61,466 bases of DNA from Girardia tigrina (lineage: Eukaryota). The position numbers and the translations under genes were made by a program. The notes beneath the pieces were generated by a model. The model was not told where the DNA came from. It was given only the letters and a program-made list of their open reading frames with translations, and searched no databases. How positions within the stretch are numbered: position 1 is the stretch's first letter; each line of letters begins with the position of its first letter. Shown here piece by piece: positions 887 to 60,636 of the stretch. The DNA is taken from the NCBI GenBank assembly GCA_001938485.1, contig MQRK01217243.1, positions 52,097 through 113,562 on the forward strand, written 5' to 3'.

Positions 887-1916
887 ACCCCCACACAAAA
901 AATCGAGTGGTGTCAAATCAGGTGACCTGGCCGGCCATACATATGGACCACATCGTCCCAGCCACGTTGTGGAAACGCTTCATCCAGAAATTGTCGCACA
1001 ATCAGTGAATAATGAGCAGGTGCTCCATCTTGCTGGAACACAGCTTTCCGTTTGCATGTTCTTGATAGCGATGGCATAAAGCAACTTTTTAACTTATCCA
1101 GGTAAAGCACCGCTGTTATGTTTCCTTCAATAAAAAAGGGCTAATAAACACGATTTGAAGACAACCCCATCCAAACATTAACTTTTTCACTTGCCTGTGA
1201 CCTCTGATATGTTTCGGTTGTTGTTTCAGTACCCCAAATGCGACAGTTATGTCTGTTTACAATGCCGTTAAGATGGAAAGTTGACTCCTCAGAGAATATC
1301 AGGTTACTAAGAAAATTTTCATCTGCATCTATAGATTTAATTAACGTTTCACATATAACACATCTAAAGAGCGCAATCTTCTTCATACAAAAGTTTCGTG
1401 GCTTGAATTCTGTAGGGGAACATTTTTAAGTCGTTTCGTAATACTTTTTGAACAGTTCCATAAGAGCAATTCAGAATTGATAACAATTTCCTGATAGAAG
1501 ACTGGGATTTTTGCATAAAATGTTCTGCTATCTCATTTTTCTTTTTATCATCAATTGGTGGTCTTCCAGATTTTGGGGCATTTAGAACGCTTCCTGTTTC
1601 TTCAAACTTTTTGAAGATGCTTCTAATACTTTTTTCGGTTGGAATATTTTTCCATTTAAGTCGTTGAAGTTCTCTTCTTACTAAAGTCACTGACTCATGC
1701 TTCACAAATAAAATAACAATTTTTACACGTTGATTTACATCCATTTTGAATCTTTCGCTTAAAACAATAACAAAAATTAATACATTTAAACAAAATGTAC
1801 TTTTAATTAAATTTTAAAGAATAAGCTTCAAGATGCCTTTATAATTAAAAAGAAATAAAATATAATTCAAAAGTTATTGCAGTTTATAACTCGGTAGTTA
1901 TTTTATGATCACCCTG
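887..1916 (-). mobile_element. Tc1/mariner-superfamily transposon (maT/DD37D-like), frameshifted and 3'-truncated
   Basis: ORFs 1364-1744, 1141-1386 and 913-1110 give an HTH region (KFEETGSV..KSGRP), FSEESTFHLNGIVNRHNCRIWG, FQQDGAPAH and WPARSPDLTPLDFFVWG. TIR end CAGGGTG at 1916 followed by TA. Confidence 0.88.
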
Positions 1917-3685: not shown

Positions 3686-6600
3686 GCATATTTATTTTTT
3701 GCTCCTTAGAACATAGCTGATCATAGATTGGTTACCATTATGAATAATTATATTTGTTCAGATACTTATTTGAGAAAATATGCAGTTGTTTAAGACTCAT
3801 CTTTCCCATTAAATAAGTCTTATTGAAATTCGTTATTGTAAAAAATTTTTTACTGACTCATTTTCTTTAAGTATTACTATTAAAGAAACTTTTGATGTTA
3901 TGGTAGTTGGGTAGGAGAATCATGGTGGTATGTATTCCCTAGTCGTAATATTTTGGATTCTTTCCATCAGTTCTATCCTTTTGAAAATTTGATAGATAAT
4001 AGATTAATTTTTCAGGATTTCGAAAAAGGATTGCATGAAGGTTTTTAATCGTATTTGATTGTGCAACAAATACTTTAAAGCAATGAAATATTTTTAAGTC
4101 TATCTGATTTTTACGACCTATTGACAGTTACTTAATATCGTTATTCATTACGGCTTGTGCAACATCATTAATTTTTACATTAATGATTTTTATTATCTCA
4201 ATGTCAAGATTTTTGCCCACACAGAGAGGCTCAACATACCTGAGTATATTTAAATCGATTTTATTTTGGTAACCAGAATCAATAATAATTTCAAAATCAT
4301 AACTTTTTAATTTATCAGTGTCATAATCTTTGAACTGTAACTTTTAGCACAATTATAATTATCTATTTAATCTTCATTATTGATGATTTAAGTCATTTTA
4401 GTGATAGAATTTTCCATTAACATTATGCAACAAGAGACCAAACTTTTTTTAACTTGATTTATTATACACCACTTTTTTAATTGGGACAATAGTCTCGTAC
4501 ACATTTCCTCAAACACAATACATAAGCCAATCAGACACTCCTACCGATCAAATATAAACATACAAACACGCATACATAATTACATCTACAACTCACAGAC
4601 TATTCCCATCAGCACAAATTCTTTTATCTGATTGGTCATCAAATCAAAACCACACACTTGCAGCAAACAACACTTTCCTCAACGTAAGTATTTTCCTTTA
4701 AAATGTAATTAGAGACAGAATAAAATAAATAAATAAAAGGTATTCAGACAAAACACCGCGAACAAAAACGCTTCGGACAAAAACTCCACGATTAAAAAGT
4801 CGAATTTAATAATTAAATATAATTTTTAATATTATTATAATATTAATAATATTATATTTTAATATTATTAAAATTATGAAATTTAGTAAACTTTTATTTT
4901 ATTAATATGAATATTATTAATTGAAAATTTTTGAAAAAAGGGCTTAAATTAACCTATAAATAAAATGTGGGATAAATAAAATGTTTATTTAAATCGTCAA
5001 AAGTCGATATCAGAGTTGTTTTTGAAAATAAAATTTGCAAGACTTATTTTATTTCTTCTAGAATCTCACAAGCTATCGCGGTAATGAGGATCTTGAAGAT
5101 AGTTCTGCAACACGACGGACGAGAAAACGTCTCGGTATAGCTCGAGAGGTTTCGTGAATGCGCGGATACACTCCGCGAGGATAGAATGACGATGTTGTCG
5201 CTGGCGCTGTCGGGCGAGGCAGCAATCGTTTTTCGTGGATTTAAAGAAACAACACGTCAGGATTTCGAGAAGAACGCAGCGGCGCTCACAGAAGCTTTCG
5301 CCCCAAGTCCGAGGCTGTCGTGGCCGAGTTTTGCTTCCAGACGGATGGCTCCCGGAGAGAGCGTTGATTTCTTTATAGCAGACCTGAAACGGTAGCGGCC
5401 GTAATTTGCCGCGGTGCAGGAGGCGGCTAGGCTTTTGTGACCCAAACTTTCATAAACGGGCTGCCGGAAGCGGCTATAAAAAGCCTGTATAAAAAGGCCG
5501 AGGCGCTCGGAAGGGCGCAAGATTTAGACCGATCGGTTCGGTTGGCGCGCATGCACGCCAAGGCAACAGACGTTCTTTCTGAGGAAGTGGCGGTCGTCGG
5601 GCGGCAAACCCTCTAGAATCTCGTCGAACACCGACGAATTAATATGCTTCCGCTGCGGTGGGAAGGGGCACATGGCGCGCGAATGCGCATCAGGAAAGCG
5701 ACGCGTTCAGTTCATAACCAACCGAGCTTCGATCAAAGGGGGGCAAATGTGGCGGAATTGCTTCAGTCGCGGCCTCATGGGGCACATCGCAAGAGACTGT
5801 CTCGTGGCAGAGCGGAAATTGGCGGGAAACGGACCACAGGTCCCCACTGCTGAGCGGGTGGGGCTTGAATATAGAGACGCGTGACTAACAATCATCCCAG
5901 CGACCGTGTGCGGAAGGAAAATGAGAGCATTGATTGATACGGGCTATTCGACAACAGTCGTTGCAAAATCGGTGGTTCCACTATCAAATCTGGTCCGTGT
6001 AATGGAATCGATGCAGAGGATGAACGGATCAGATGTGAATGTTCAATTCAGAGCGACAATACCGATCGAGTGCAGCGGAAACCAAATCGTGTGCCGCGTC
6101 CCAGTGGTGCCGGAAGTCATTTCGTCGAGGGCCGAGATGCTTCTCGGCATGGATGCAATCAGTCAACTCGGGGGAGTATGGGTTCCAGGCAGAGGCGGTG
6201 CCCCAAGTTTCGGACGCATCGAGCATCGAGCAGCAGTGAGTATGGTTAAAAAACCGGGGCATGCACGGATTGAGCATGCAGATTTTTCGGTCGAGTTTGA
6301 TGGCCGCTCGTATACCGCGGCATGGAGATGGAAGAACGACGCCGCACCGGAACAAATGACCAAGGGAGCCGCTGCATATGCGTTTGCAAAGCAGTACAAA
6401 GAAGAAGTGGACCGGAAGCTATCCGATTGGAAGAGAAACGGGTGGCTCATCCCGTTCAAAGGCGAAGCAAAGGCGATACTAACGCTAACGGTAGTAGTGC
6501 AGGCGGTCAAAGAAAAGGTGCGACCGGTCATGGATTATCGAGCGGTGAATGACTTTGTGTCGAGTCACACCGCTGAGAGCCTGGTCTGTGCCGAGAAACT

Positions 6601-9600
6601 GCGCAAAAGGCGGCAAATGGGAAAAAAATCTGAAGATAATCGATTTAAGACGGGCGTACATCCAGATCAAAGTGGATGAAAACCTATGGTCTTATCAGGT
6701 GATAAAACACGAGGGCAGGCGTGGTGTCTGACACGATTGGGCTTTGGACTGAACGTGGCACCAAAAATCATGAGGCGTATCATGAACCACGTTTTGGGAT
6801 CCGATGAGATGGAGACATAGTGCGCAGACTCTTACTACAACGACGTCATAGTCGACACCGAGAAGGTGGTCTTCAACAGTTTCGGGCTCCAAACAAAACC
6901 GCCTATGAAGATAAACGGAGTAAGAGTGCTAGGGTTCGCGGTCCGTGAAATTAACGGTGAGTTGCAATGGTACCGGGACGGCAAGATTCCGGAGTTGTCT
7001 GGTCGATTGACGCGACGGAATCTGTTCTCGTGGGTCGGAGAGCTGGTGGGCCATTTTCCAGTCGGCGGCTGGTTGAGGCCAGTGTGCAGTTTCCTTAAGA
7101 GGATAGCCAGTGGCGGCGGATGGGATGACGAGGTGGGACCGCGAGCAATGAACATCGCGAAAAAGTTGGAAAACGTCTGCAGAGCGAAGACCCAGTTACC
7201 GGCCGATGGGAGGTTCCCGGCTGCAAACAGGGAAGAGTTTGGTGCGACGCGAGCTCTATTGCAACCGGTATCTTTGTAGAGATAGGGGGAGCGGTGGTCG
7301 AAGATGCATCATGGTTGCGAAAGGAGGACGATGCAGTTCACATAAACTTGGTGGAACTCGAAGCGGTGAATGAAGTAATAAAAGCGGCGGTGGCATGGGG
7401 ANNNNNNNNNNNNNNNNNNNNNNNNNNNNCCGCCACAGTGTTTCGGTGGATGATCAATGCCATGAGGGGCGATAAACCGATCAAAGCTAGTGGAATGAGC
7501 GAGCTGCTGGTCAAACGACGGATCAGTACTATTAAAACGACTATTGAAGAGGAACAGCTACAGATAAAGTGGAAGTTAATAAGTTCAGCAGAAAACAGAG
7601 CAGACCGCCTCACTCGCGTTCGTAGGACTGGTTGATACCAGTAAAAAAGCCGATGGGAGTGTCAGCATTAGCGATCTAGTTAGAGCAAGAATTAGCAGAC
7701 AGTCTAGAGAAGCTCCACTGAATTCACCATTTCGGAGTGAGACGGATGAAGTTTCTGGCGAGGAAATAGTAGGGTCCGGGACGAGTATCAGAAAGCCAAA
7801 TTCAAGCAGTTGTTAAAGAATGTACTCAGTGTGCATCGATCGATCCCACCACAGTAAAATTGGAGAAAGGTGACCTGGGTGTCAAAGGGACGTGGCAACG
7901 ACTTGCCATGGACTTGACGCACACCACCGAGGATAAGTTTATGGTAATGATTTACTGCGGTCCAGGGTGGTTCTCCTTATGGAGAAAGATCGAATCAGAG
8001 AACGATGAGGAGCTGTGTACCGCAATCAAGGCGGTGTTTAATGAATTTGGCTCCCCACAGGAGCTACTGATGGACAATTTTGCGATTAACCAGGGAGCAG
8101 CAGTCAAGAAGTTGCTAACGGAAACGGGTGTACAAATCCGGTTTCGGTGTGCAAATCGACCGATGGAAACGGCATTGTTGAGCGATGCCACCGGACCTTC
8201 AAGCGCATGGCGGCACAGAGTGGGAAGTCAATCGAGGATATGGTAGCGTGGTATAACGCTGCTTCAAATTCAGCCGGCATAATTCTGGCATCGACGGTTT
8301 TCACGCAGAATCGGCGACTGTTATTGTCGGTCGACTATGCGGATCGCTTTCCGAAGACCCGAGAAGTCATATAAACTGCGGAGCTACAAACATGGGATGC
8401 TGTTCTCGTGAAACCAGCAAATTCGAAATTTACGACTAGGTGGAGACGATCAGTTGTGGAAGAAGTTCGCCCCCCCCCATCAAGTCATGATCGACGGAAT
8501 TCCGTATCATGTGTCACATGTCAGACGTACCCCTGAAGAAAAATTAATACCGGCCAACGAGGAGTCAATGAGGCAGAACTTTGATGGCCCAGAAACAAAC
8601 GGTTATAGCGACAGTTCTGATGAGCATGACGAGCAGATAAGGAATGGTGATGTTTCAGAAAGACAAATGTATCCGGGGGAAGCGACCGAGCAGAGGTCAC
8701 ATCGAGCGATCGTGCGACCGGTGCGATTCAAGGATTTTGTCTGCACCGGGTAGACGCACACAGAAACGGGCAGTACTCCACAGTGCACGGAGTTCGTGTA
8801 CATTTGTACCTTAAGGGGAAGGGGAATGTGGGATAAATAAAATGTTGTTTGTTTAAATCGTCAAAAGTCGATATCAGAGTTGTTTTTGAAAATAAAATTT
8901 GCAAGACTTATTTCATTTCTTCTAGAATCTCACATTAATATTATTAAAATGAATATTATTAATTGAATTTTTTTCAAAAAAGGGCTAAAATTAACATATA
9001 AATAAACTGAAAATGTCTGGAAGTCGCAAAAATTTCAATGCATATTTGTGGTGAAAAACTAAATTATAGAAAATTTAAATGAAGCCGAATCCGCTTTGTA
9101 GATAGAATGTTAATATTTTGTCTGTAAGAAAATATTTTACAAAAGTAAAAATATTTTTAAATAATAAATATATAAAAATATTTTATTCTAAGTTTTGGAA
9201 TTATTTTATAAAAATATTAAAAAACCTTTTCAGCTTATTTATATGTAGATTTAAGACCTTTTTTGAAAAATTTTCAATTAATATTCATTTTATTAATATT
9301 AATTAAATAAAATTTTACTAAATTTAATAATATTAATTTAATTATTAAATTCGATTTTTTATTCGCGGTGTTTTTGTTTAATATGGCGACCATTGCCAGT
9401 AATTCATATCAACTGATATCGTGCAAAAGAAAAATTTAAAAAGTAAAATCATGAGTTGCTATTCCTTCCGTCGTATTCACCATTTCTAAATCCCAGTGAA
9501 ATCATGTTTTCGAAATGGAAAAGAATAATAATTAGTGCATGATCAACTAATGAACAAGAGGTTTTGTTAAATATTAACAATGCCCATTTATCAATTTCGA

Positions 9601-12068: not shown

Positions 12069-15000
12069 CATCATATCTAGATTTTAATTAGGGTTCTTTT
12101 TCAAAATTCAAAATTAATAATAGACTAACCTGAAAAGCTTAAAAATGAAATGAAAAGTTTTTAGGTCAATAAAATCAAAAGTTTCTTTGATAAGTTAATA
12201 AAGTCAAAAAATATTTTAAGTCAATGTAACACGTGAAAAGTTTATTTTCAAAACACTGTTTAATTGATAATATTCAAACAAAATATTTATCAAAAAAGCA
12301 TATAATAAAAATTTCAAATAATTAAAATATCTAATATCCAACACTCCCACCAGATTCGTCCTCAGAAGAATCTGAATCCACGATGTAATCATTTAGATAA
12401 GACGGTCTTCGTCTTTCTCAACTAAGCCTACTGTTCAATGATTGTTCCTCTTGTGTTTGATTGTCTGGTAGTGATGTGGTTTCCTCCATATTCATATAGT
12501 ATGACTTGGAATTTTCAACCAAGTCAGGCTGTCTAGGTCGAATGTCTGCGATATGTCTTGGACCACAAAATCCGTTGCAATTTACTAGATATTTCCTTTG
12601 ATCTATTCTTTTCACGATAACACCCTTGGTCCATTGCTGTGTACATGGTGTACTGTTTTCTGGTTTTACCCACACTAATTGATTCTCAACATAATCTGGA
12701 TTTCCACAAAACGGTTCCTTTTCACTTCTTCCAATTATATATAACCCTATGGGCAAATAGCTATACAGCGCCGAGCTTGGTGTTTCTTTTCCTTCAGATG
12801 GCGTGTTATTATACAACCATAAGGCTTCCAATATGCTGATATTTGATCTGGACGCAATTCTTTTGATTGTTCTATGATTCCTTTCTATTATTCCGTTGCA
12901 GTTAGGTCGATTGATGGCACGATACATTACTCGAACGTTCCATTTTTCCATTAGCTTGTTGCATTCTACTAAATGAAATGTGGTATAATTATCGATAATT
13001 AGTTCCTTGGGGGACCCACGTTCACAAAACAAACTTGAAAATTCTGAGACAATTGACTTGATGTCTTCAGCCTTAATTAATTTCCATATCGCAAAGCGAG
13101 AAGGACCACAATCGATTACTCTTAAAAATTTTTGTTGATTGTACTTTGTAACATCCGCAGCAAGTCTTGTCCAGTTTTCGTTGACGCTCAGCCTACCGGT
13201 TTTCCATTTTACGGGTGCCGGATCGATGAATTGACATTTTTGATATCTTGAAATCAGATCCTTGATATCCGCGTTTTACACACCTATTCCTTGCTTTGCA
13301 CATAGATATCGCATTCTGTTTGTGCCTAAATGACACTTATCATGAAGTTGCTGCAGCTTGAGTAGATCGTCCGTAACCGTTAAAAAACAATTGCTTCTTT
13401 TTAATTGTTTTGGGATTCTTGTCAACTCGTCAGCCTTGTTATATTCGCTATTAACAAACTCGATCTCATACTCCTGATACAGCTCCTTGATCATCGACAG
13501 TCTTCGTTTTATTAAAAGCTCAGATGAAGCCTTGGTATTTAATTTTTCGCGATCTGAGATTGTTGTGGTTACCCACGAAACTACTGACTTATTATCCGAT
13601 TTTACTATCACGCTCCTTAAACCCCATTTCACACATAAGTTTAAACCCTTTACAACTGCTTCTATTTCTGCTACATTAATATGTCTAGAATTATCAGTTT
13701 TTCTCAACCATGATGCATCCTCGATTATGTTCCATTTGACTTCTAACGCCGCACTAATGGCTATTGAACTTGCGTCGCACCATATAATACCTTCCCTGCA
13801 GTCATCAATGGCCCATAAACCTCTGCAAGGATCACTCTCCCTCACTGTCTTTAAAACCCATTTAATCTTCTCGAATAATTCATCGTCTATCTTTTCATCC
13901 CACCTTCCCTCACTAAGTTGTTTAAGATATGAACATGACGGACGTAGCCAACTAGCTACCGGATATATTCCTACTAATTGTCCACATAACGAATATAACT
14001 CACGACGGGAAATTGATTTCACATTCAGCTCATCCCTTACCTGATTGTCTCTCTTCCATCTCACTACATGTTGGTCCTTAAAGACTTTCATTCCTAAAAC
14101 TCGAACTTCGTTGGCTTGTGACAGATTTTCCGGTTTCTTACATTTGAGACCGAAGTTATTGAACACTTTCTCTACTTCTTGAACAGAAATGAAACTTTGA
14201 TTTACATAAATATCATCAATATAAGAGTTGGTATTTTCACGCATCCTGGTGTCAGAGTTCAGAATCCACCTGACGATTTCGGTCATTATAGTTGGTGCAA
14301 TGTTTAAACCAAAACCCATCATAGTTAAAGCATATTTCTTGTTATTAATGATACAAGATTGGTAACGCCACATCTCATTATGAACATGAATCTGCATGTA
14401 CGCCTCTGACAAATCAAGCATTGAAAAAGTCGAACCCCTACGTCGCCAATCGCGGAGCTTTTCTAAACATATGTCCCGAGAACCACTATAAACGTCCTCG
14501 TTTAATTTTCTAAAATCAAAAATGGGTCTTATCTTGGACTTATTAGCCTGTAATATTCCAAATATCGGTATGGATCCTATCGATTTACCCATTTCTTTCT
14601 CATTGTACTCGATTAGATAACCCTTTTCTACCAAACCGTCTAAAATTTTCAACGTTGCAACATCTTTTAATTTGTTGTCCTTAAAAATTGACTGACGATT
14701 CGGAAGATGACTCGGAGCCTTACTTTTCCAATTCCATTTAATCGACCAATTTTCCTTAAACTCAATTTCAAAATTATGCTTTTTTATACTAACAAGAGTT
14801 GCAGTACAACTCAAGCATCTATCGATCCCTTTAATTTCTTCTTCACCGAACTCAATAACACCCTTATTAATTCTCACACCGCCCAATTTATCTATGATAT
14901 CCATACCTATTAAGATCCCTAGACCATACGGCAAATGTTCCATGACCGAACATTCCACCCTAATGATCCTACCATTTATATTCAGCCGCACTTCACCCGA

Positions 15001-18000
15001 ACCTACTCTAACACCCTTTCCATTCACAAAACCATACTTTCTCCGTCAGAAAACAACATACAATCACTAAATAACCCTTTTAAAACAACCGTTTTCGAAC
15101 AACCCGAATCAATCAACGCTATGGCCGACCTGTCATTTACGGTGACGATCATCGTCGGCAACGCCTGCAACTGTGAAGGGAGAAAGCCGGCGTCTACAAA
15201 CTCCCCTGTTCGTTTCCCGACCGACAATATTTTGCGATATGACCCGGTTTCTGACATTTGTAGCAAATTGTTTGTCTGTTTGATTGCCACTGAGAACCCT
15301 TATGATGATAACTTTACTTCGATTCGGTGTCTCTCTCACGATAAACATAGGGTCTTTTCTAAAGATTTGCTCTGGGTTTATCGAGTTCTCCCTCACCTCC
15401 GGAACTCACTGTTTCTTTGTTGTTGTTTTCATATTGTATTGCCGCCATTGAACCCTGTAATAGAGCCCTTTTAATCCCCAAATACCTGCGGCTATACTCG
15501 ATCATTTCCACCAGGGGTTGGTCACCGGCCCATTATAAATCCACCTGCAACTCGAAAGGCAGTCCAGCCATGAAGACAACCTTTGTTAGATCGTCGACCT
15601 TTGTTGCTAACATCTTCTCCTGAGACGCATATTCATCGATATTATCGCCATCGTGATACTGTAAGTTTATCAATTGCCGATGCAATTGTATGCAGAACGA
15701 CTAGTCAGGCCGAACGAATTGTTTAATATCTTGAAGAACCGATCGCAGCTGCTTTGCGTCTTCTCGTCCGATTCCATATCGATGTTCAGTGCAACCCCCG
15801 ATAGTAAAAAAGGAGATACGCGACTGGATCAGTAATCTGCTGGATTTTCATGACCATTTCAAATTTCTTCTGCCAAATCTCGAAGCTGTTGCTTCCATCG
15901 AATTTTTCCAAAAACTCCAAAACGATTTTCATATCATTCATTATGCCCGGATAGCTTGTAACACGTGAAAAGTTTATTTTCAAAACACTGTTTAATTGAT
16001 AATACTCAAACAAAATATTTATCAAAAAAATATATATTAAATATTTCAAATAATGAAAATATCTAATATCCAACAGTCAATTTTGTTTAATCTAATAAAT
16101 TATAATAACAATGATTTTTTGCCATAAAGTCAAAATTAAAATTTAAAAATAGACTGGTCTAAGATTGATAATTTATCATTAAAAGAATATCATTTTAAAA
16201 TAATTTTTTTAATTTTAAGTAAAATAAAAAAATGTTTTTATGTGGAATAATTTTTAATGTATTTTGATAGCCGTTATCATTTTCTACTTGATTTAAAACT
16301 GCTAGATAAAAAGTAATTCTGTTTTTTTATATTTCGATTTATATATTTTATTCAGTTTTTAAGATGTCTAAAACTAAATGTAGCTACATTTGCAAATTCA
16401 AAGAAATAGTTTGACATATTCAGGTGAATTTACACCTTTTAGGGTTCAGCTTAACTGTTAGTTGTGCTATTGTTTTGTTTATTGCGAAAATTTTTTTTGA
16501 TTCTCACAGAAACAGTCTAAAGTGTAAAAACTTGCTGAGATCTCAAAATTAATCAACATTTGCATTATATGAAGCACCGATAGAGGGTTCTCGGGCTTAT
16601 CGTGTTACTAGAGCGTTTATCCAAGTTGATATACCACTGTACAAAAATCATTAGCAAAGCATTCTAGAGGTATTTTACTAGCATGAACTAGCAATTACCC
16701 TCAGTCTCAAATGGTAGATCAGCGGTTGAACTTAGTTGTCCGAATATACTTTAAGATACAAAGGATAAAATTCACATAAAAAATATGTCACTACATTGAT
16801 CGGAGATATTTCTACTCCATCTTTAGTGCTGTCTTATTGCTTGCAGGTCTTGTAGATTCTAGCCCAATTATCAATATCATCGTTCAAATCGCTTAGGGCA
16901 ATCTTCGAAAAATGGTTATACCAAAAATTTATTTACTGTCATTAATATCTGATACAGCATGACTCAAGCAAGTGAAAATATCAAAATTCAGTACCCAAAT
17001 ATCTCTCATATTACCTGTTTAGTTCATTTACTCCATAATTGTGCTGTTATGGTCAAATCATATTATAAAGACATCGACAATATTATATCAAGCATTAAAG
17101 CTTTTTTACAAATAAAGGTAGAAAGTAATTATTCTCTAACATATGAGGTCCACCTGAGCCACTTGGCAACAAGGTGGGGATCTTGTCTGTGAGTAGTCCA
17201 GTAATATTTAAAAAACTACCAACAGCAAAAATGTTTGTCTCATCTGTTGATAGAAATGGCATCATAGCAACTAAAACAAAAGAATCTTTTCTATCCACTA
17301 ATCTTGCTCAAAATCTGGCTGAAATATGCTCAACTTATCTTCAAATTAATGATTTGTTTATTTTTGTTGACATTTCAACCTGTACAATCGAAAATTTTTA
17401 CTGACAGAGAAAAGCTCTCAGTTTTGGCAATAGATCAGTTAAAATTTAGGAGGACACAAATCTGGTTGATTATGAACTCGTCAATTTTTCAGTCAAATTT
17501 TTACATTAATTAAGTAAAACCAAATTCATTTAGTTAATTTAATTTTTTATTAATTTTGTGATTTTGTTAAGTTTTGTTTTATCAATTTAAATAATGGTCA
17601 CTACAATATACATTTATAATAATATAAATATTTTCAGGACATCTACATTTAAGAAATGTCTTAATGCTTAATGAAGTAAAATGCGCACTGACGGATATTG
17701 AAAATTCCATTTTAGGATTGGTATCTCAAGACAGACATTATTTTGTCGGAATATTAAAGAAATTAGTTATATTTTGTGATATTTTTCTTATTTTTGTTAT
17801 ATATTCTTTAATTTAGACTTTCGAGGAAATAGATATTTACTGTTTCGGCAGATTAATTTATGAAATAATATTTGGAGAACCTCTTGCTTCTACCTTTATT
17901 GTAAATGATGACAGAATCAAATGGCCCACTCTAACTATAAGTAATATTTTTTGCTTTTACGTTTTAATAAAAATATGAAAAACATTAAGTGATTTTAAAT

Positions 18001-21000: not shown

Positions 21001-24000
21001 TAACTGTACTTCTGTAATTAACAATGCTTAAGATTCTGTTTGAATTTTTTATTCTTAATATAACACTATCAGTATTTCACACAGAAAAAGAAAAGTACCG
21101 ATTTATAAATATTCGGTATTCTTCGTATAAGTAAACGTAAATCATATTTTTAAGTGTCACTACGATTAATATGTTAATAATTGTTAATATCTATTACATT
21201 ATTGTGATATTTTAAATATAAGAAATTATTATATAAAAAGGATAATTGTTATTAGATTAAACGTTTATTAATTCCTAAAAATTCACAAATCATGTTTCGT
21301 ATTTAATAGAATATCTGCAGGTATGTTATCCAAAGGAAGAATAGCATATTTCACAAAAAAACTACAAATAAATAGTCTGTATTGAATGACAGAAATTATC
21401 ATTTATTTTCGATAATACATAAAAATACAAATGGTTTGACAAAGAGTAGTGACAATGCACATTATCTTGTTGAAGAAATATTTGATAGAAGATTTTCTAG
21501 TTTTGAAGTTCTGGAATAAGAAATTTATTCAACATTTCTAGTCAAGTACCACTATTGACTGCAGTCTGTTAAATGAAAAATGGTTCAACACTGCGCTATG
21601 TACCGAAAATTCATAATCGGTGTTATCCATTTCAAATAAAAGAGCCAATTCCGGTTGTAAGATTTATTAATTATGACACAATAGCATCAATATTAAGTAT
21701 TTAATGGGGAAAATAGGGATGTTATAATGAATCCCATTTTAAAAGCCTTTTCATTGGTTTACACTCTCAAACACACACATAACACACACATTAACATGCA
21801 TCCAACATACATTCAATTAAATCATATTGTTGTAACATCACTACTGATGTTATACAATCAATTTCATCAGCAAACACACCATAATTATTACATACTTATT
21901 CTTAATTATTTTTGTTAATAATACACAATAATTATTACGTAACTATTCCCACTCACAATCAGAGAATCTATGTAATGCCTCCAGATTTCATGTGACATTG
22001 GCTTCCCAAATACGGCAATTGTGATAATTCAATCTCTCACTTATGTCAAATATTGCTTCATTTGAGAAAGTCGATTCGTCAAGAAAGTTTATGATTATTG
22101 CACATTTTGACAACATGAGTTGATAAAAGTCTAATATGGAATTAAGAATTTCTTCCCATAACATTTAAACCACTTGAATTTTATTTTCAGAATCTTTTAA
22201 ATAGAAGAAAACTGAATGTTAGTTCAACATTTATGTACATCACTTTGAATTAGTTGTAATGTTCCTTCTGATCTTGATCATCAGATACCTGAACAGGGAT
22301 ATCTACAACCAAAACCCTGGTCTGGTAGACCAAGCCTCATAAAAAATTACGGAACGTAATAAAGATGGATTACTGTCATTCGCGAATTTGAACAAAATCC
22401 AGCTGTCAACTTAGACTTCAACTTGGCTTTTCAAATAGAACAGCAAACACCATGTGTCATAAAATGAAATTCAAGAATCAAGATATGTTAAGTCGAATTC
22501 CATTTCCTGCCTAAAACATACATAGACAATTAGAATGGCGTCGAAGACATCCCGCGGTTTCACTTCACACCACATTTTGGGATGAAAAGTGGTGGAGGAT
22601 ATTCCGAGGAAGGGAGCAGTTCATTTGGGCACCGCAATAAAGTGTATTAAAGTAATACTTTTATTTTTAATCAAGTATTTTAATAAACAGCGCGCAAATA
22701 TATAGACAAATGAACACAATTTCTTTTATAAATCTTTATTATCAATAATACGTATTAACACTTAGGTAATTGATACACGTTATCAGATCACAGTTATTTA
22801 ATATCAAAACTGTAAATCCTTAAAACGTACAATACCTGCAGAATCTGAAAGATTCAAAATCTTTTTCACCAATACTGGATACTCAATGATTTAGTAGCTA
22901 GCTTTTAGTAATAACAAATATTTAATACAAGAAATAAACTCTACTTAAATGATCGAAGATCGTGATTCTTCCTAAATTGATTTATTGTAATAGAAATTTT
23001 GGGACAATTCTAACTGAATTCATTCTCGTTCATATAGTTCTTTTGATTACCTTGAGAATTGATTTAATAAAACAAATGAAGTTTATTCTTATTAAAATTA
23101 AAAAGTTCAATTTATTTTTGTATAAAAATTTGAGTGAATAAAATACCCCTTTGTAAATAACATTCATTTCAGTTTAACACTCTTCTTTTTTTATTTTTAA
23201 ATATACATATATTTACAATGAAATAATAAAAATAATTTAAAATAATTAAGTATGTAAAATAATTCGAATTGTTTATACACTGGATATTGTATCTATACTA
23301 TGAAGTATAGTCTTCCCAAGAGCACTGTAGCTAACATCTTGAAAATGAAAGATAAAATTAAAGAAGATTGGCACCCCATTGCAGCAGGTTCAACAAGAAA
23401 TCATCTAACATCGATGGGACCTGCGAATAATGCCTTCTCAATGTGGTTTAATCAACAGCACACCTTGAATGTGCCTATTAGAGGACCTTTATTGGCAGAG
23501 AAGGCGCGCCAAATTGTACTGGAACTCGACAAGGAAAGCCTTTACGCCAGTAACGGTTTAATCGACCGTTTTAAAAAGAGACATCGTTTAGTCTTTAAAG
23601 CTGTAAAAGGAGAAGCAGGGGCCGCTGATGAAGATGCAGTTTATCGATGGAAACAACTATTCTTCTTTCTTTACTTCAGTGTTATTCTGCTAAAGATGTG
23701 TAAAATGCTGACGAATCGGACTTTTTTTACCAATGTATGCCATACAAGACCTTCTAAGTAGACAGATGTAAAGGTGGTAAGAAAAGTAAAGATCAGGTGA
23801 CTTTGTTGTTTTGTGCTAACGTGGATGGCAGCGACAAAAGACAACATATTTTTATTGGCAATTAAACCAAACCATGATGCTTTAAGGGAATCGATGCAGT
23901 GAGACTTCCAGTACAATATACACTAGTAGTAACAAAGCTTGAATGAATCGCTTTCTTTGAAACGAATGGCTCACTAAATTCGATCAGCAAATGACACGGA

Positions 24001-30000: not shown

Positions 30001-33000
30001 AGGCCTTTCTAGGTCTATGTATTCCCAAAGTTGATATTTTGGGTAATTAACCTAAATCAAGAAGCAGTAAAAAGGATTAAAAATAATACTAGATTTATTT
30101 AATGACGTAAATAATTTGGATTATATATTTTTTTAAACATTTAACATTACACATTTGTTAACAAATGAATACTTAATATTAACGAATAGACTTCACAGTA
30201 TGTAGTTTATCTGATTTTAATTTTATAATAAAAATGTGAATGCAGATAAGTTTTGAGTGTCTGAGTTATTATTCTAAATTTATAAAGCTTAAACATACCA
30301 TATTATCGACTTTTGATAGCTTCTGCATTTTGAGGTCCAACAAATACTTATCAGCATTTCTGACAAAAATTTTAAAATAAACAATAAAATTTTATTATAA
30401 AATATAAGTTTTATACATTTCATAGACAAAGTTTAAATGATTAATATACGACAGAAATTATGAAAATTGATGTTAGATATAAAAGGATCATTTTTCAGAT
30501 TGTTCAAGTCTTGCAATAATAAACCAATTGATAAATCATCATTCAAAATGTCAGGTTTGATATTTTTGGTATAAAAATAACAATTTCGCTCCTAATCTTT
30601 TGCAGTCCCTTGTAAAGATTTTCTATTATCAATTCAACAATATTCACTCAAATTGTTGGCAAGTGATCAGAAACTTGTTAAATCTCAAAGACGCAAATTA
30701 GAAGCTGACGCTCTTGGAATAAAAATGAAGCAGCAAAGAAAAGAAGAATCGAGGCGAACGAAAAATGTTAATGTTACTGGAGATTGTGTTGAGGATTCAA
30801 GCTCAAATAAACCAAAAATTTCAACAAGTAGACTAAATTTATTTATTCAAAATTATTATTCGGTCATTATTTTAAAACTTTTTCGTTTTTATTTCATTTA
30901 TAACGTTAATCATATTGAGGATGTTTATGAATTGTAAATGAATGTATAGATCTTAAGTCAATTAATTTTCATTTCATTATCTTAATGGTTTACAAATTAT
31001 TTAGTTATATATTACTAAGAATTATTGCTAATTTTACTTCACTGAACGATTATTCATTTTCAGCGTTAAGACATGTTTTGCAATGTTGCACGATATTTTG
31101 TTAGTATATAAACGAACGAGAAATCAATATTTTGTTTCATCTAGATGAAAAAACATAATTTTGAAACAACTAAAAATTTTAAAATTATTTAATATTTATA
31201 TATAATTAATATTCGATTTTAAAATTAAAACGCAAAGACGTGCTAGTATATCAATATATCAGTATAATAAAGATATATTTTAAAATTCAACCTTTATAAA
31301 TATTTGCCTTTGTTAATACGATGTTCACTAATATAGATTTCGTCACAGTATACGGATCATAAATTGCAAATCAAAAAGATCAATACAGCAGCTATAAATT
31401 TGCATCATTGAAACAAGTATTCATCATCCGTTTTTTTGAAATCAATAACAACTTTATATTACATTAGCACTTAATATTAATAATGATTTTATAATCTTTG
31501 TCCCAATAGAATTTAAACTTTAGAATTTAAACCTAACTATTTGTCTTATTTTCTCATATTCAATAGTAATATGGCACTGATTAACCAAAAATTTCATTTT
31601 CTCCACTCCACCCTGACATTGCTCATGCAACCATGTTAATTTTTTAAAATCATTACTAACCTCTCCAGCTATTGCTGACAAAACCTCATTTTCATTGACA
31701 ATCCACCGTTTAGGATTTCTAGTTAATTCATCCACACGATTCTTTTCTGACGATACCGACACAATTTCAATACTTAATTCGTATTCCTGAACCATATCGC
31801 TAATCAGTTGTAAACGACGCCGTAATAACATTTCTGCAACCGCTGTAGTTTTAACCCTCCGTTTATTCGATAAAACATCTTTAACATATCCTGCTGCAAT
31901 CTTACTATCTGTCCTAATGGTAAAAACGCGAAGATTCCATAAAATTGCAACATTAATTGATTCACAGATTGCTTCCAGCTCGGCCAAATTGATGTAACGA
32001 CAATCTGATTTTTTCCGTAACCATGCAGTGTCTTTTATTATACATCTGTCGATCTTCAAACACACCCCAATCGCTAAAGAACTAGCATCACACCAGATAC
32101 TACTTTTATTTTTTTTATCAGGATTCCACACTCCTTTTGCTGGATCTTCCATTCTAACTCGCTCGACTATCCCCTTAAGTTTCTTTGCAACGTGCTTGTC
32201 AACTAATGTTTTACAGTCCCCAATACACAACCGTTTGATATAAGCACATACAACTCTTAACCAACCTAAAACTGGATGAATACCGCATAACATACGGCAA
32301 ATGGAAAACAACTTTCTTTTTGTTAAACAATTCGAACCAATCTCGGTTGACAATGGGTTCGCTCTTCTCCAATATAATTTTTCTTCGAATCGAAATACCT
32401 CTAACCCCAACACTCGAACAGGATTTGCTATCGTCACTCGTTTCCTCGGTATTCAATCCGAATTTTTCAAATGCTTGGCTACTTATTCGACAGAAATTTT
32501 ATTTTCATCAACTCTAATATCGTCGATATATGTGTCAGTAGCATCCTGAATATCCTTACACAGCGATAATGCCGTTTTCACAATCGTTGACATCACCGTA
32601 GGTGCAATATTGAGCCCGAATCCTATACGAGGTAATACGTATAATTTGCCGGCATATTTTATCGTCTGAAATACCCATAAATCAGGATCAACTCTTACTT
32701 GCATATACGCTTCTCGAAGGTCGAGAATTGCACTACATCCCAAGTCTCAATCGAATTTTCTCGATATATATAGCACTAGTACCGGAATACACATCGATAT
32801 ATCGATTCATCTCCATAAAATCAAATATTGGTCTCACCTGCTTCTTATTTAGCTGCTCCACGGCAAACATTGGTACCAAACCCTGAGGGTTTAGCATATT
32901 CTTATCATACGGTAGTATATATCCCATTTCTTTCCAATCATTCATTTTCTTGTCAAACTATACCATAGTTTTCTTATCCATTTGGTAATTTGACACAGTA

Positions 33001-57504: not shown

Positions 57505-59960
57505 GGGCTAAGTAATATTTTTGAATGTTGTTTATTGTATGTTATTTTAGGATTGTGTTTCTCTCATCCAGATGGAACATTGATATTTTAAATGTTTTAA
57601 AACGTCGAATTATTTAATCAATTAAAAAAATATAAATAACAACTTTAAAAATAAATTAATATATCATAAATAATATATTTAAAATAATTTTTTAAATAAT
57701 TAAAATTAAATTTTAATTTAAATTTGTTTGAATAATAAGACGTTTAGAAAGAGAATTAAAAAAAATTATCAATCAAGAACAATGACTAGTTACAAAAGTT
57801 TTGTGGAGAATTGTTCTAGTGGAAATTCAAGTTGTGATATGTCGACCAACGACCATGTGACTCCGAACATCAGAGATACAGAGATATTCGACGGATCTGA
57901 GTCAAAAGTAGAGGAATTCTTAAAGAGCTTCGGCAGAGATGCGAAGATCATGGGATTCTCAGAAGAAAGAAGAGTATAGGTGACAGCATTCATGAATCCG
58001 AAAGCAATAAGTAAATATGATAATTCACAGGGAGATACCTGAGAAACAAAAATGAAATCTCCATTCAACAGAGAAAAGAACATCCTGTAGATAATGAGTG
58101 AATTTGTCGAAATAAAAATCTGATCGAACGACCCCTCAACCGTATTTCAAAAAATAGACGAAATAATTTGGAAACTAGTAGAAAAGAAATTCGGAAAAAA
58201 GAGATATCAGACCTGGAATATGCTAACGCGGTAGATGATAGAAAAGTGAAGAGAGAGATAGCTCCAAGAGATGTCTCGAAAGCTGAAGATATCAAATGTA
58301 TACAGATGAAAATATATGAATTTGAATCAAAGAGCAGAGATTTAAGGGTGGACGCCTATTCAACAAAGAGGGACAATGAATGGAGAAGAAAAACATAATA
58401 TACGACAGCCAAGACCACGAAACAAAGGAAGAATAATAGAAGAAACAAAGAGAATTTCAAAACGAGAAGAATTTCTTGTTGGGCATGCCACAAAGAAGGT
58501 CCCGTGAGAAGAGAATGCTAAATTATAATATGAAACCACTGTAACAGAAAATGACACGTAAGAACACAGTACTTTGAAAATTCGAATAGATGCAGAGAAC
58601 GGGAGCAATAAAAACGAGACAACGGATAGACTGGAAGAGATGACAGGAGAAATTATTCGAATGTGAAATATGGTGAGCAAAGGACAAAGACAAATAGAAA
58701 GTATTCAGTGGTAGAATTAGGAATGGTTAGATAGATAGAAAGAATAGATAGAAGGTAAGATGTGACAAGAAGAGATTACTTCCCGAATAATAGGAAATTC
58801 GGAGAAGAACAGGGATACGAGGACGCACTATCACACTGAGAAGTGATTGGTGTGCTATAATAGGGAGTAAATGTAAATGTGTGATTGATTGTATAAATGA
58901 ATGTGTATGTGATTGTATGTTTGATGATGTGTATAAAAATATTCCTCTGGTGAGCATGACGGAAATGATGAAAAATGTGATAGCATGAATACTGAAAAAG
59001 TGAAGAAAAAGAGATATAGTGAGAATACACATGTTTAACATAAATTATAAAAAATTGAAAGGACGACCAAGTATAGAGTTTCGCATAAAGAATAAAAATG
59101 TACAGTGCATCCTGGACACATGGGCCAATGTAAACGTTATTAAATCAGAGATAATCAAAGATATAAAAGAACTATATGAAAATAAAATCGACGACCAACT
59201 AATGTAACTTTTAACAGAATATAAATCAATCTTTATGGCGGAAAAATAGGATATTTGAAGAACTTTACTGACAAAACATAAAATCGAAACACATGGAGAA
59301 CCGGTATTAGTGAAACCTTATCGACAACCGAAATTTTTCGAGCAAATATTAGACGATATTATTAGAAATTATGAGGAAAACGATATTATCGAAAACTGCA
59401 ATTCCACGTGGAATCTTCCTCTAGTATGTATTTGGAAAAAAGGAGAAACAGAACATTAAAGTGTGAGTAGATTTTCGGCAATTGAATAAAATCCCGGTCA
59501 GACCTGCATTTCCAATGCCAAATGTGGAAATGTTAAACACACTAAGTGGAGCAAATTTCTTTAGCACAATCGACTTGGAAAGTGTATACCGTCAATTAGA
59601 GTTGCAAGATGAATCAAAAATCAAAATAGCATTCTCAACAAAGAATGATCGATGCTGTTTCAAGATATTGCCGTTCAGAATTGCGGCTGCACCAGCAACG
59701 TTCCGAAAAGTAATGGTAAAAGTTTTGAGCGAAGTAAACTGGAAAGAGGCAGTTGTGTATTTGGATGATATTCTGATTTTTGCGAAAGATAAAAAAGAAC
59801 ACCTCAAACGAATTGAACATGTATTTGGTAAAATAAAGGAATCGGGTCTAAGAATAAACCACGAGAAATGCCACTTCATGGTTGAAAAGACAAAGTTTTT
59901 GGGATATGTGATCTGCAAAGATGGCATAAAAACAGATCAAACAAAGATCAATGCAATATC
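57505..59960 (+). mobile_element. Gypsy element 5' part: diverged LTR, PBS, gag, protease, RT (3'-truncated, degenerate)
   Basis: LTR-like 57505-57794 ending TACA; TTGTGGAGAAT at 57801 resembles the canonical TGGTGGAGAAT tRNA-Ala PBS. IFDGSESKVEEFL, CWACHKEG knuckle, CILDTWANVN, VYLDDILIF. Confidence 0.85.
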
Positions 59961-59974
59961 ATTTATATACCTTG

Positions 59975-60636
59975 TTGGATAACAATTATCATATTTCATC
60001 GAGGCCGCCGGCTTCCTCTCGCAACTATTTTAAAAGCCAAAACAATTTCTTTTCTTCTCAAACATATCTTGGTATTTTTGGCCATAGAATTCAAACTCAC
60101 TTTTTGATAATCGGTTTACGTTTGTATCCTTCCCTTTGCTTTCAATAAAAACGAGTTACATTCAAAATAACATGATTGCATTTTCATCGGTGATACAAAA
60201 TTTTGAACATAAAAGAACCAATAAATGAACCAATAAACTTTGGGCATTCTCCTCCCGTTCAATTTTTATTACTTCAAATTATCAAACATTTCCAGTCACT
60301 TTTTTGAAATATTTCTTTCAATGCCGTTTCGATTTCGTTAATGTCATTCTTCCTCGCTTTATTTAGATTTAACCAAACATTATATGCATTATCTTCGAGC
60401 AGCATCAGCATTGCTTTAGTCAGGTCCTCATTAGAAGCTTCGGTGATGACTTTGCACAATCGAACCACTTTACGAAATTCTCGTCCGAATTATACTGTTT
60501 GACTGTTTTGATTAACGTCTTCAATTAGACCAAGTAGCTTGTAGTTTCTAACGAAACGAAACAAACACTCTTTTTCAGTCAATTTAATATTTAAAAAAAC
60601 CACCTCCCTGTCATCATAGATCAAAATATTCTAACA
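59975..60636 (-). mobile_element. 5' fragment C of the compact LTR lineage: ~97-bp LTR, AGCTA-type PBS, gag relic
   Basis: Putative LTR 60540-60636 (TGTTAG...CTACA on the minus strand), PBS AGCTACTTGGTC at 60528-60539, gag-like AMLMLLEDNAYNVWLNL..NDINEIETALKEIF. Confidence 0.65.

What the first reader, a model, noticed from the sequence alone, without database searches (positions are those of the whole stretch)
15945..15956. LTR retrotransposon lineage apparently primed by the first 12 nt of a tRNA, not the CCA 3' end
Seen: three different elements of one lineage have, flush against the 5' LTR, AGCTATCCGGGC (B, 15945-15956, minus), AGCTATCGCGGT (A, 5071-5082) and AGCTACTTGGTC (C, 60528-60539, minus). 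None has the canonical TGG. Their reverse complements are GCCCGGA-TAGCT, ACCGCGA-TAGCT and GACCAAG-TAGCT: an invariant TAGCT at positions 8-12 after seven variable bases. Established: tRNAs have a 7-nt acceptor strand followed by U8-A9-G10-C11-U12, and GCCCGGAUAGCU is the exact 5' end of animal tRNA-Lys(UUU). Known exceptions to 3'-CCA priming are anticodon-cleaved half tRNA-iMet (copia, Ty5) and Tf1 self-priming, where RNase H cuts after nt 11 of the element's own RNA. The 12-mers are absent from the LTRs, which argues against self-priming. Inference: these elements anneal a tRNA 5' end and prime from a 3'-OH at U12 in the D-stem, possibly generated by their own RNase H (a trans version of Tf1 priming), with different subfamilies using different tRNAs. 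I do not know of a description of this mode but cannot exclude one.
Basis: partly seen in the sequence, partly recalled or inferred. Interest (0 to 1): 0.92.

Follow-up and report, generated by a model that had tools for sequence, protein, structure and literature searches.

The report
Retrotransposons primed by tRNA 5' ends
A widespread family of very small (about 3.9 kb) animal LTR retrotransposons has, where the primer-binding site should be, a 12-base block complementary to the first 12 bases of host tRNAs (Phe, Lys and others) rather than to the usual CCA 3' end, which points to a way of starting reverse transcription that I found described nowhere.

Summary
Elements A (4966-8934, +) and B (12225-16075, -) are compact LTR retrotransposons. 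They have 105-119 nt LTRs, a polypurine tract and, in B, a perfect 5-bp target duplication. Their genes run gag, then PR-RT-DUF7047-RNase H-integrase. Each has a 12-mer flush against the 5' LTR, 1-3 nt before the gag ATG.

The same layout recurs in 60 related loci. These include all 36 metagenome loci with enough upstream sequence, plus a barnacle, a leafhopper and an acanthocephalan. None has TGG within 0-5 nt of the LTR end.

Conservation covers exactly the last three LTR bases plus the 12 positions. The 12-mers fall into a few discrete classes that recur in separate branches of the pol tree. They have no complement inside the elements, so Tf1-type self-priming is not supported.

Three classes equal nt 1-12 of tRNA-Phe, tRNA-Lys(UUU) and tRNA-Lys(CUU) as printed in papers. 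Three more begin tRNA genes in phage contigs.

Details need correcting. Only tRNA positions 4-7 vary. A's 12-mer is a one-base variant of the commonest unassigned class. C is an unverifiable fragment.

Cleavage after nt 12 and the priming itself are inferred, not shown. I found no prior description in the held library.

The parts
16076..16080 (-). Element B, target-site duplication (TTGAC), upstream copy
   Evidence: Read directly; identical to 12220-12224.
15957..16075 (-). Element B, 5' LTR (119 nt, TGTTGG...GTTACA)
   Evidence: Direct repeat with 12225-12343, 95% identical. Holds a TATA-like run and an AATAAA.
15945..15956 (-). Element B, putative primer-binding site AGCTATCCGGGC. Its complement GCCCGGATAGCT equals nt 1-12 of tRNA-Lys(UUU) as printed in papers.
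   Evidence: The same LTR end, 12-mer and gag start occur in close relative L081 and the same 12-mer class in L058.
15263..15941 (-). Element B, gag (broken: at least 2 frameshifts and 4 in-frame stops)
   Evidence: tblastn with the intact 224-aa gag ORF of L081, 82% identity, whole query covered. The ATG lies 3 nt after the 12-mer.
12334..15152 (-). Element B, pol: PR-RT-DUF7047-RNase H(RVT_3)-integrase (broken: at least 1 frameshift and 2 in-frame stops)
   Evidence: Pfam hits. tblastn with P0001 covers all 953 residues at 73% identity.
12344..12356 (-). Element B, purine-rich tract before the 3' LTR (..GGTGGGAG)
   Evidence: Read directly.
12225..12343 (-). Element B, 3' LTR
12220..12224 (-). 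Element B, target-site duplication (TTGAC), downstream copy
4966..5070 (+). Element A, 5' LTR (105 nt, TGTGGG...CTCACA)
   Evidence: Direct repeat with 8827-8934, 95% identical.
5071..5082 (+). Element A, putative primer-binding site AGCTATCGCGGT, one base from the common family class AGCTATCGCGGC
   Evidence: The ATG lies 1 nt downstream.
5084..8812 (+). Element A, gag-pol region. Pol homology spans 5894-8458 (broken: at least 3 frameshifts and 6 in-frame stops). The gag frame is also interrupted and too diverged to align to B-type gag.
   Evidence: Only 34% aa identity to P0001, so A belongs to a different family of the lineage from B.
8813..8826 (+). Element A, polypurine tract (AAGGGGAAGGGGAA)
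8827..8934 (+). Element A, 3' LTR
60528..60539 (-). Fragment C, 12-mer AGCTACTTGGTC after ..AAACTACA
   Evidence: It fits the family pattern with one mismatch.
60540..60636 (-). Fragment C, putative LTR (TGTTAG...ACTACA); boundary not verifiable
   Evidence: No second copy in the window.
60274..60527 (-). Fragment C, short gag-like remnant
   Evidence: No BLASTP match to B's gag, so membership of the lineage is unproven.
31535..32993 (-). Fourth, 5'-truncated pol fragment of the same lineage (no LTR or 12-mer left)

Best explanation
A and B, and probably C, are dead copies of a large, compact LTR-retrotransposon lineage. Members are about 3.9 kb. They have a gag with two CCHC knuckles and a pol ordered PR-RT-DUF7047-RNase H-integrase. 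The 12 bases directly after the 5' LTR are the minus-strand primer-binding site, and they are complementary to nucleotides 1-12 of a host tRNA: the acceptor 5' strand, U8, A9 and the first three D-stem bases. Different sublineages are matched to different tRNAs (Phe, Lys-UUU, Lys-CUU and others not yet assigned). Shown here: the position, the exact 12-nt extent, the discrete recurring classes, the identity of three classes with published tRNA 5' ends, and the lack of any partner inside the element. Inferred: the tRNA 5' strand is unwound and annealed, probably with help from the nucleocapsid knuckles. A 3'-OH is made after nt 12, by the element's RNase H cutting at the end of the RNA duplex as in Tf1, or by a host nuclease. 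DNA synthesis then runs from there into U5. Plus-strand strong-stop synthesis later copies the 12-nt primer to its natural 5' end. That would explain why the block is exactly 12 nt long and why it is reset to a perfect copy of whichever tRNA was used.
For: Position: by the logic of reverse transcription the first base after U5 pairs with the primer's 3' end. In B the LTR end is fixed by the LTR pair and a perfect 5-bp duplication. Recurrence: 60 loci carry the block, including 36 of 36 metagenome loci with at least 1000 nt upstream of pol. None of the 60 has TGG within 0-5 nt of the LTR end. Extent: information content is high from -3 to +12 and falls to background at +13, and positions 7-9 are variable. 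Discrete classes (tRNA sense): GCCGAAATAGCT in 15 loci, GCCGCGATAGCT in 13, GCCTAGATAGCT in 10, GCCGTGATAGCT in 7, plus rarer ones. Elements that share a class have unrelated LTR ends and leaders, and their pol proteins are mostly a third to two thirds identical. On a pol tree of 53 tips the classes need 23 changes. The minimum is 14 and shuffles average 35, so classes are inherited but also gained repeatedly. No internal partner: the best complement within each element has 3-4 mismatches of 12, the same as shuffles, and no constant place. tRNA identity from printed sequences: a human tRNA-Phe primer starts GCCGAAATAGCT and a tRNA-Lys,3 primer starts GCCCGGATAGCT. A fragment printed in a catalogue of tRNA fragments starts GCCCGGCTAGCT, and a listed paper on the 5'-tRNA-Lys(CUU) half holds that string (context not read). 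The Drosophila 'tRNA Phe GAA 5' probe' ends in AGCTATTTCGGC. The zebrafish 5'tRF-Lys(TTT) probe ends in AGCTATCCGGGC, which is B's 12-mer. In both probes the bases next to the block differ from the LTR end ACA, so the match stops at nt 12. Named hosts: a barnacle, a leafhopper and an acanthocephalan all carry the Phe-type block. The three unassigned common classes begin ARAGORN-called tRNA genes (Phe, Thr, Met, Ser) in viral contigs. One rare class has ..TAGCG (L064).
Against: No host tRNA set could be obtained. No tRNA gene lies in the window or in any fetched eukaryotic locus. The classes GCCGCGA.., GCCTAGA.. and GCCGTGA.. together cover half of the loci, and no eukaryotic tRNA is documented for them here; the phage tRNAs only show that such 5' ends exist. 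All classes share GCC at 1-3 and A9, which is much narrower than a full tRNA repertoire. Many classes are one base apart, so part of the pattern could be drift of a constrained element. I know of no described 12-nt tRNA fragment ending inside the D-stem (my own knowledge, not checked). Nothing here shows priming, cleavage or the cutting enzyme. The window copies are dead.
Confidence: 0.75

Rival explanations
1. The same primer-binding site and the same tRNA 5' end, but the primer is a ready-made short 5' tRNA fragment produced by a host nuclease and packaged, not a tRNA cut by the element's RNase H.
For: Nothing in the sequence says who makes the cut. 5' tRNA fragments of Lys and Phe tRNAs are abundant enough to be probed in animals.
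Against: The fragments printed in those papers are about 30 nt or longer. From my own knowledge, short 5' fragments end in the D-loop at about nt 14-16, not at nt 12, and their extra 3' bases would not pair with the LTR end ACA (searches show ..CTG next to the block in the probes). The only documented precedent for an 11-12 nt RNA primer, Tf1, relies on the element's own RNase H (reference titles).
Confidence: 0.3
2. The 12-mer is a conserved cis-acting signal unrelated to tRNA, for example for packaging, dimerisation, control of gag translation or integrase binding. Its likeness to tRNA 5' ends is coincidence, and priming happens otherwise.
For: GCC at 1-3 and TAGCT at 8-12 are almost fixed, classes are often one base apart, and the gag ATG follows within 0-17 nt.
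Against: The four 'variable' positions stay fixed in elements whose LTR ends and leaders are unrelated, yet the same values reappear in separate clades. This calls for a partner sequence, and none exists in the element. Three classes are exact 12 of 12 matches to the three published animal tRNA 5' ends of the form GCC....TAGCT. The block begins at the first base after U5, where the primer's 3' end must sit. No other conserved block or TGG lies nearby.
Confidence: 0.08
3. Tf1-type self-priming: the 12-mer pairs with the 5' end of the element's own transcript.
For: The 12-nt length is close to Tf1's self-primer (11 nt, from my own knowledge; documents the mechanism), and no TGG is present.
Against: No complement of the 12-mer occurs in the LTR or anywhere else in 58 elements beyond chance level. 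The one near-match, in L071, is what 58 trials would give (my estimate), and it is not tRNA- or R-like.
Confidence: 0.03

Closest known systems
Tf1/Tf2/Tj1 and the Tf1/sushi group (self-primed reverse transcription)
   Same: A very short RNA primer (11 nt in Tf1, 12 nt here) annealed to a PBS flush with the LTR. The primer's 3' end is internal to a longer RNA, so a cut in an RNA duplex is needed. In Tf1 the element's RNase H makes that cut (and the reference titles there; the 11-nt figure is from my own knowledge).
   Different: In Tf1 the primer is the 5' end of the element's own mRNA and its complement lies in the LTR. Here no such complement exists and the partner is a host tRNA acting in trans. 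The proteins show no special relation to Tf1: no chromodomain and no Pfam RT_RNaseH hit.
copia, 1731, Ty5, Osser, Bianca: half-molecule tRNA priming (1/2 tRNA-Met, 1/2 tRNA-Ile)
   Same: A host tRNA is used after internal cleavage, so the primer's 3' end is not the CCA end.
   Different: Those primers end in the anticodon loop and the PBS pairs with the anticodon-stem region of one tRNA species (my own knowledge). Here the PBS pairs with nt 1-12, the cut would lie in the D-stem, and several tRNA species are used. Those elements are Ty1/copia with integrase before RT; these have integrase last.
Canonical LTR-retroelement priming by the 3' end of a full tRNA (PBS starting TGG)
   Same: A host tRNA is the primer source. 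The PBS sits directly after U5. PBS type goes with sublineage and switches now and then.
   Different: Opposite end of the tRNA: 0 of 60 loci have TGG within 0-5 nt of the LTR end. The PBS is 12 nt and is bounded by the tRNA's 5' end.
Known LTR-retrotransposon superfamilies (Ty3/gypsy, Bel/Pao)
   Same: LTRs, 5-bp duplication, polypurine tract, gag with CCHC knuckles, order PR-RT-RH-IN.
   Different: The Pfam hallmarks of either superfamily, as I know them, are absent: no RT_RNaseH or RT_RNaseH_2 and no Peptidase_A17. DUF7047 and an RVT_3-type RNase H are found instead. Elements are only about 3.7-4.2 kb with LTRs of about 100-300 nt. Placement in a superfamily was not resolved.

Membership tests
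LTR retrotransposon (order Ortervirales in the broad sense) | Two direct terminal repeats ending TG..CA, flanked by a short target duplication | tested here: met
   B: 119-nt LTRs at 95% identity, TGT..ACA ends, TTGAC duplication. A: LTRs at 95% identity but no matching duplication.
LTR retrotransposon (order Ortervirales in the broad sense) | gag plus pol with protease, reverse transcriptase, RNase H and integrase; polypurine tract before the 3' LTR | tested here: met
   Pfam hits in window ORFs and in relatives; CCHC knuckles in relatives' gag. Purine tracts read.
Canonical 3'-CCA tRNA priming | PBS beginning TGG within 0-5 nt of the LTR end, complementary to a tRNA 3' end | tested here: not met
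   0 of 60 loci. Positions +1 to +3 are 98-100% fixed as AGC.
Tf1-type self-priming | PBS complementary to a stretch in the 5' LTR (start of the transcript) | tested here: not met
   Best complement in each of 58 elements has 3-4 mismatches of 12, equal to shuffles.
copia/Ty5-type half-tRNA priming | PBS complementary to the anticodon-stem region of tRNA-iMet (or Ile), with the primer ending in the anticodon loop | tested here: not met
   The 12-mers match the very first 12 bases of published Phe and Lys tRNA sequences and probes. No iMet sequence was compared directly.
Ty1/copia (Pseudoviridae) | Integrase upstream of reverse transcriptase | tested here: not met
   The order is PR-RT-DUF7047-RNase H-integrase.
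Ty3/gypsy (Metaviridae) | Order PR-RT-RH-IN and an RT/RNase H of the Ty3 type (placement in an RT phylogeny) | tested here: inconclusive
   The order is met. Pfam gives weak RVT_1 hits (below the curated cut-off in P0027) plus DUF7047 and RVT_3, but not the RT_RNaseH families. The fold search gives only generic likeness to caulimoviral and retroviral Pol at 11-20% identity. No reference phylogeny was possible.
Bel/Pao (Belpaoviridae) | Pao-type protease/RT region (Pfam Peptidase_A17) and Pao-type gag | tested here: inconclusive
   No such Pfam hit at E up to 1. No phylogeny was made.
Priming by tRNA nt 1-12 (the class proposed here) | PBS equals the complement of nt 1-12 of a tRNA of the same host | tested here: inconclusive
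   Met against published animal Phe, Lys(UUU) and Lys(CUU) 5' ends. Host tRNA sets were not available, and three common classes are unassigned.
Priming by tRNA nt 1-12 (the class proposed here) | Minus-strand DNA physically joined to a 12-nt tRNA 5' fragment | not testable with these tools
   Needs sequencing data from natural host tissue.

The most novel reading that the evidence does not exclude
A whole, widespread animal lineage of miniature LTR retrotransposons starts reverse transcription in a way not described before. The 5' strand of a host tRNA is pulled out of its acceptor stem and D-stem and annealed to a 12-nt PBS. The element's own RNase H then cuts it after nt 12, a trans version of Tf1 priming. 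The tRNA's natural 5' end sets the PBS length at plus-strand transfer.
Probability: 0.35. Interest if true: 0.9.

Novelty: new variant of a known kind. Interest (0 to 1): 0.8.

Why it matters
Priming of reverse transcription is one of the most conserved steps in retroviruses and LTR retrotransposons, and only three solutions are on record in what I could read: the tRNA 3' end, a half-tRNA cut in the anticodon loop, and Tf1-type self-priming. A fourth solution, used by a family with about 1,800 protein clusters across several animal phyla, would have several consequences.

- It would show that the tRNA 5' end can be recruited as a primer.
- It would link tRNA-primed and self-primed mechanisms, since both would use a short primer and a cut in an RNA duplex.
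- It would explain why standard annotation tools, which look for TGG and tRNA 3' ends (method), would report these elements as lacking a PBS.
- It suggests that 5' tRNA fragments, and not only the 3' fragments already studied, might interfere with retroelements.
- It gives a simple signature (..ACA + AGCTAYNNNNGGC + ATG) for finding the family.

Tried and rejected
- Self-priming: I searched each of 58 elements for the complement of its own 12-mer. Only chance-level matches turned up, and the one near-match, in L071, is not meaningful.
- Canonical PBS: there is no TGG and no second conserved block in the 20 nt after the 12-mer.
- Host tRNAs: ARAGORN found none in the window, in the 80 metagenome loci or in the six loci from genomes. 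The host of the window was not identified. Its long ORFs outside the elements are transposase-like or give no Pfam hit.
- Text searches for the three unassigned classes, with T or with U, gave nothing useful.
- Scans of viral contigs for tRNA-shaped patterns found tRNA genes starting with these 12-mers. These are phage tRNAs, so they show only that such 5' ends exist.
- Prior art: six word searches and one search for the PBS strings and 'DUF7047' found no description. Bowen & McDonald 1999, Ganko et al. 2001, Levin 1996 and Atwood-Moore et al. 2006 are not held.
- Classification: Pfam, PDB sequence search and a fold search of a confident model (pLDDT 80.5) gave only generic Pol likeness.
- Close relatives P0001, P0002 and P0004 lie on contigs cut inside gag, so they gave no PBS. 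The Aplysia locus shows no recognisable junction. P0090's contig had no DNA available.
- Drift of a free cis-element was rejected as the main explanation. The variable positions are held fixed within lineages whose neighbouring sequence is randomised.
Full report
**1. What is in the window.**
- Element B (minus strand) spans 12225-16075. It has 119-nt LTRs (15957-16075 and 12225-12343, 95% identical) with TGT..ACA ends. A purine tract precedes the 3' LTR, and a perfect 5-bp duplication, TTGAC, lies on both sides.
- AGCTATCCGGGC (15945-15956) therefore begins at the first base after the LTR. The gag ATG follows 3 nt later.
- Element A (plus strand) spans 4966-8934. Its LTRs are 105 and 108 nt (95% identical). 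The polypurine tract AAGGGGAAGGGGAA precedes the 3' LTR, and AGCTATCGCGGT (5071-5082) is flush with the 5' LTR, 1 nt before an ATG.
- Both elements are only about 3.9 kb. They encode gag and a pol ordered protease, reverse transcriptase, DUF7047, RNase H (RVT_3 type) and integrase.
- Both are dead. B's gag has at least 2 frameshifts and 4 in-frame stops, and B's pol at least 1 frameshift and 2 stops. A's pol has at least 3 frameshifts and 6 stops, and A's gag frame is also interrupted.
- A and B are distant relatives: A's pol is 34% identical to B's close relative P0001.
- 'Element C' is only a junction-like sequence plus about 250 nt of gag-like remnant. No second LTR exists in the window and BLASTP finds no likeness to B's gag. 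Its membership and its LTR boundary rest on resemblance alone.
- A fourth, 5'-truncated pol fragment lies at 31535-32993.
- No tRNA gene is in the window. I did not identify the host. Nothing suggests that the window is human. The N runs were left as they are.

**2. Relatives.**
- B's 583-aa pol ORF has 101 relatives in the length window searched. Most lie on contigs of 3.1-4.9 kb. Named ones come from a barnacle, a leafhopper, a sea hare, an octopus and an acanthocephalan.
- A profile search finds 1,844 cluster representatives at E <= 1e-30.
- Eighty metagenome loci were fetched. Many are circular or tandem assemblies with a unit of about 3.7-4.2 kb, as expected when two short LTRs collapse in assembly.
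- In every locus with enough upstream sequence (36 of 36 with at least 1000 nt before pol), the same layout is present about 0.9-1.0 kb upstream of pol. The LTR ends ..ACA, then comes a 12-mer of the form AGCTAYNNNNGGC, then the gag ATG after 0-17 nt in most loci.
- Where both LTRs are on the contig (L009, L017, L040, L044), the block is flush with the LTR end and a G-rich purine tract precedes the 3' LTR.
- Loci from named genomes show the same layout with AGCTATTTCGGC: Amphibalanus amphitrite, Macrosteles quadrilineatus and Pomphorhynchus laevis.
- L081, 93% identical to B in pol, has B's LTR end, 12-mer and gag start.
- In all, 60 loci carry the block, and none has TGG within 0-5 nt of the LTR end.

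**3. Shape of the conservation.**
- Over 54 distinct junctions, information content is near maximal from -3 (the ACA of the LTR end) to +6 and from +10 to +12. It is low at +7 to +9 and falls to background from +13 on.
- Positions +1 to +5 were part of my search pattern, so their score is partly circular. The sharp 3' edge and the variable core are not.
- In tRNA sense, positions 1-3 are GCC, positions 4-7 vary, and positions 8-12 are TAGCT (TAGCG once, in L064).
- A's ACCGCGATAGCT is the common class GCCGCGATAGCT with one changed base in a decayed copy, not evidence of a tRNA starting with A.

**4. Why a partner RNA, and why an external one.**

| 12-mer class (tRNA sense) | Loci |
|---|---|
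| GCCGAAATAGCT | 15 |
| GCCGCGATAGCT | 13 |
| GCCTAGATAGCT | 10 |
| GCCGTGATAGCT | 7 |
| GCCGGGATAGCT | 2 |
| GCCCGGATAGCT | 2, plus window element B |
| GCCCGGCTAGCT, GCCGTAATAGCT, GCCGAGGTAGCT, GCCGTGTTAGCT, GCCTCGGTAGCG | 1 each |
| one- or two-base variants | a few |

- Elements that share a class have unrelated LTR ends and leaders, and their pol proteins are mostly a third to two thirds identical. The 'variable' positions are therefore under selection within each lineage.
- On a neighbour-joining pol tree of 53 tips with 15 classes, the classes need 23 changes. The minimum is 14, shuffles average 35 and the lowest shuffle gives 30. Classes are inherited, but the same class arises in separate clades.
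- Fixed within lineages, different between them and recurrent: this is what a sequence copied from, or matched to, a partner looks like.
- The partner is not in the element. The best complement of each 12-mer within its own element has 3-4 mismatches of 12, the same as shuffled sequence, and sits at no constant place. Tf1-type self-priming is thus not met.

**5. Why tRNA 5' ends.**
- Sequences printed in papers give exact matches that start at base 1.
- A human tRNA-Phe forward primer begins GCCGAAATAGCT, and a tRNA-Lys,3 primer begins GCCCGGATAGCT.
- A catalogue of tRNA fragments prints fragments that begin GCCCGGCTAGCT and GCCGAAATAGCT. A listed paper on the 5'-tRNA-Lys(CUU) half holds the first string; its context was not read.
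- The Drosophila 'tRNA Phe GAA 5' probe' ends in AGCTATTTCGGC.
- The zebrafish 5'tRF-Lys(TTT) probe ends in AGCTATCCGGGC, which is exactly B's 12-mer.
- In both probes the bases next to the block are ..CTG, not the ..ACA of the LTR end. Complementarity therefore stops at tRNA nt 12.
- Two of the three named hosts with the Phe-type block are arthropods, like Drosophila.
- The three common classes with no text match begin ARAGORN-called tRNA genes in viral contigs: Thr, Met, Phe and Ser for GCCGCGATAGCT, mostly Phe for GCCTAGATAGCT, and Phe and Thr for GCCGTGATAGCT. That shows they are legitimate tRNA 5' ends. It does not show that the hosts have them.
- From textbook tRNA numbering (my own knowledge), the fixed positions fit the near-universal U8, purine 9, G10 and pyrimidine 11, and G1.

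**6. Mechanism, with shown and inferred steps kept apart.**
- Shown: a 12-nt block, bounded on one side by the end of U5 and on the other by what would be tRNA nt 1. It is complementary to nt 1-12 of known tRNAs and is present throughout a large lineage that lacks any canonical or self-priming site.
- Inferred from the general scheme of LTR-element replication: the base after U5 pairs with the primer's 3' end, so the primer must end at tRNA nt 12.
- Inferred: because nt 12 is internal, a cut is needed.
- Inferred: plus-strand strong-stop synthesis would copy the RNA primer to its 5' end. This explains the 12-nt length and the resetting of the PBS to a perfect copy of whichever tRNA primed.
- Open: who makes the cut. 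Candidates are the element's RNase H, as in Tf1 where RNase H cleaves an RNA duplex (reference titles), or a host nuclease.
- Possible reason for the narrow choice of tRNAs (GCC.., A9): the need for bases that pair freely and for partial match when primers are switched. This is speculation.

**7. Comparison with what is known.**
- A survey of plant elements lists four PBS states: tRNA 3' end, half-molecule tRNA (Met, Ile), self-priming and none.
- The fission-yeast literature describes self-priming.
- None of the papers found by six word searches, nor by a search for the PBS strings themselves and for 'DUF7047', describes a PBS matched to tRNA nt 1-12.
- Several older papers are not held, so an earlier description cannot be excluded.
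- The lineage itself could not be placed. It has the gypsy/Bel order of domains but not their Pfam hallmarks. A confident model (pLDDT 80.5) resembles caulimoviral and retroviral Pol only generically.

**8. Verdict.**
- The details for A and C are corrected.
- The chemistry remains inference.
- I rate it a new variant of a known kind: tRNA-derived priming of an LTR retroelement.
- The decisive functional experiment lies outside what this report may propose. The descriptive tests are listed under next steps.

- None of those letters was entered in a tool.
- No claim here rests on them. Claims of tRNA identity rest on strings printed in papers and on ARAGORN calls.

Noticed in passing
window 4890-4966 and 8935-9009: Element A is bracketed by a direct repeat of about 75 nt (87% identical) that ends exactly at the 5' LTR start and begins exactly at the 3' LTR end. 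A has no matching short target duplication. Possible causes are insertion into a tandem repeat or recombination between two copies.
   Followed up: partly
window 52925-54747 (+) and 59482-59979 (+): Two copies of a different reverse-transcriptase lineage (strong RVT_1 hit), 75-84% identical to each other at the DNA level. The second lies next to fragment C on the opposite strand.
   Followed up: no
window 23300-23761 (+) and 1364-1744 (-): ORFs with a Tc5-transposase DNA-binding domain and a DUF4817 helix-turn-helix domain. The window is rich in transposon remains, and no clear host gene was found among the long ORFs.
   Followed up: no
L002, L015, L023, L027, L028, L029, L036, L050, L062, L064, L073: Contigs whose two ends are identical over 90-2701 nt, so they are circular or tandem assemblies with a unit of about 3.7-4.2 kb. 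The likely cause is collapse of the two short LTRs in assembly, but real tandem arrays or one-LTR circles are not excluded.
   Followed up: partly
P0178, P0182, P0187, P0189, P0190: Proteins of 1343-1416 aa match only the PR-RT-DUF7047-RNase H part of the profile. They may belong to a larger sister lineage, and its primer-binding site would be worth reading.
   Followed up: no
L071:1286-1297: A one-mismatch complement of this element's own 12-mer lies 327 nt upstream of it. By my estimate this is at chance level for 58 elements, and it is not part of a tRNA gene.
   Followed up: yes
L083:2830-3870: A Tc1/mariner-type transposase gene (DDE_3, HTH_Tnp_Tc3_2) sits directly downstream of a 62%-identical relative of B, cutting off its integrase end.
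   Followed up: no
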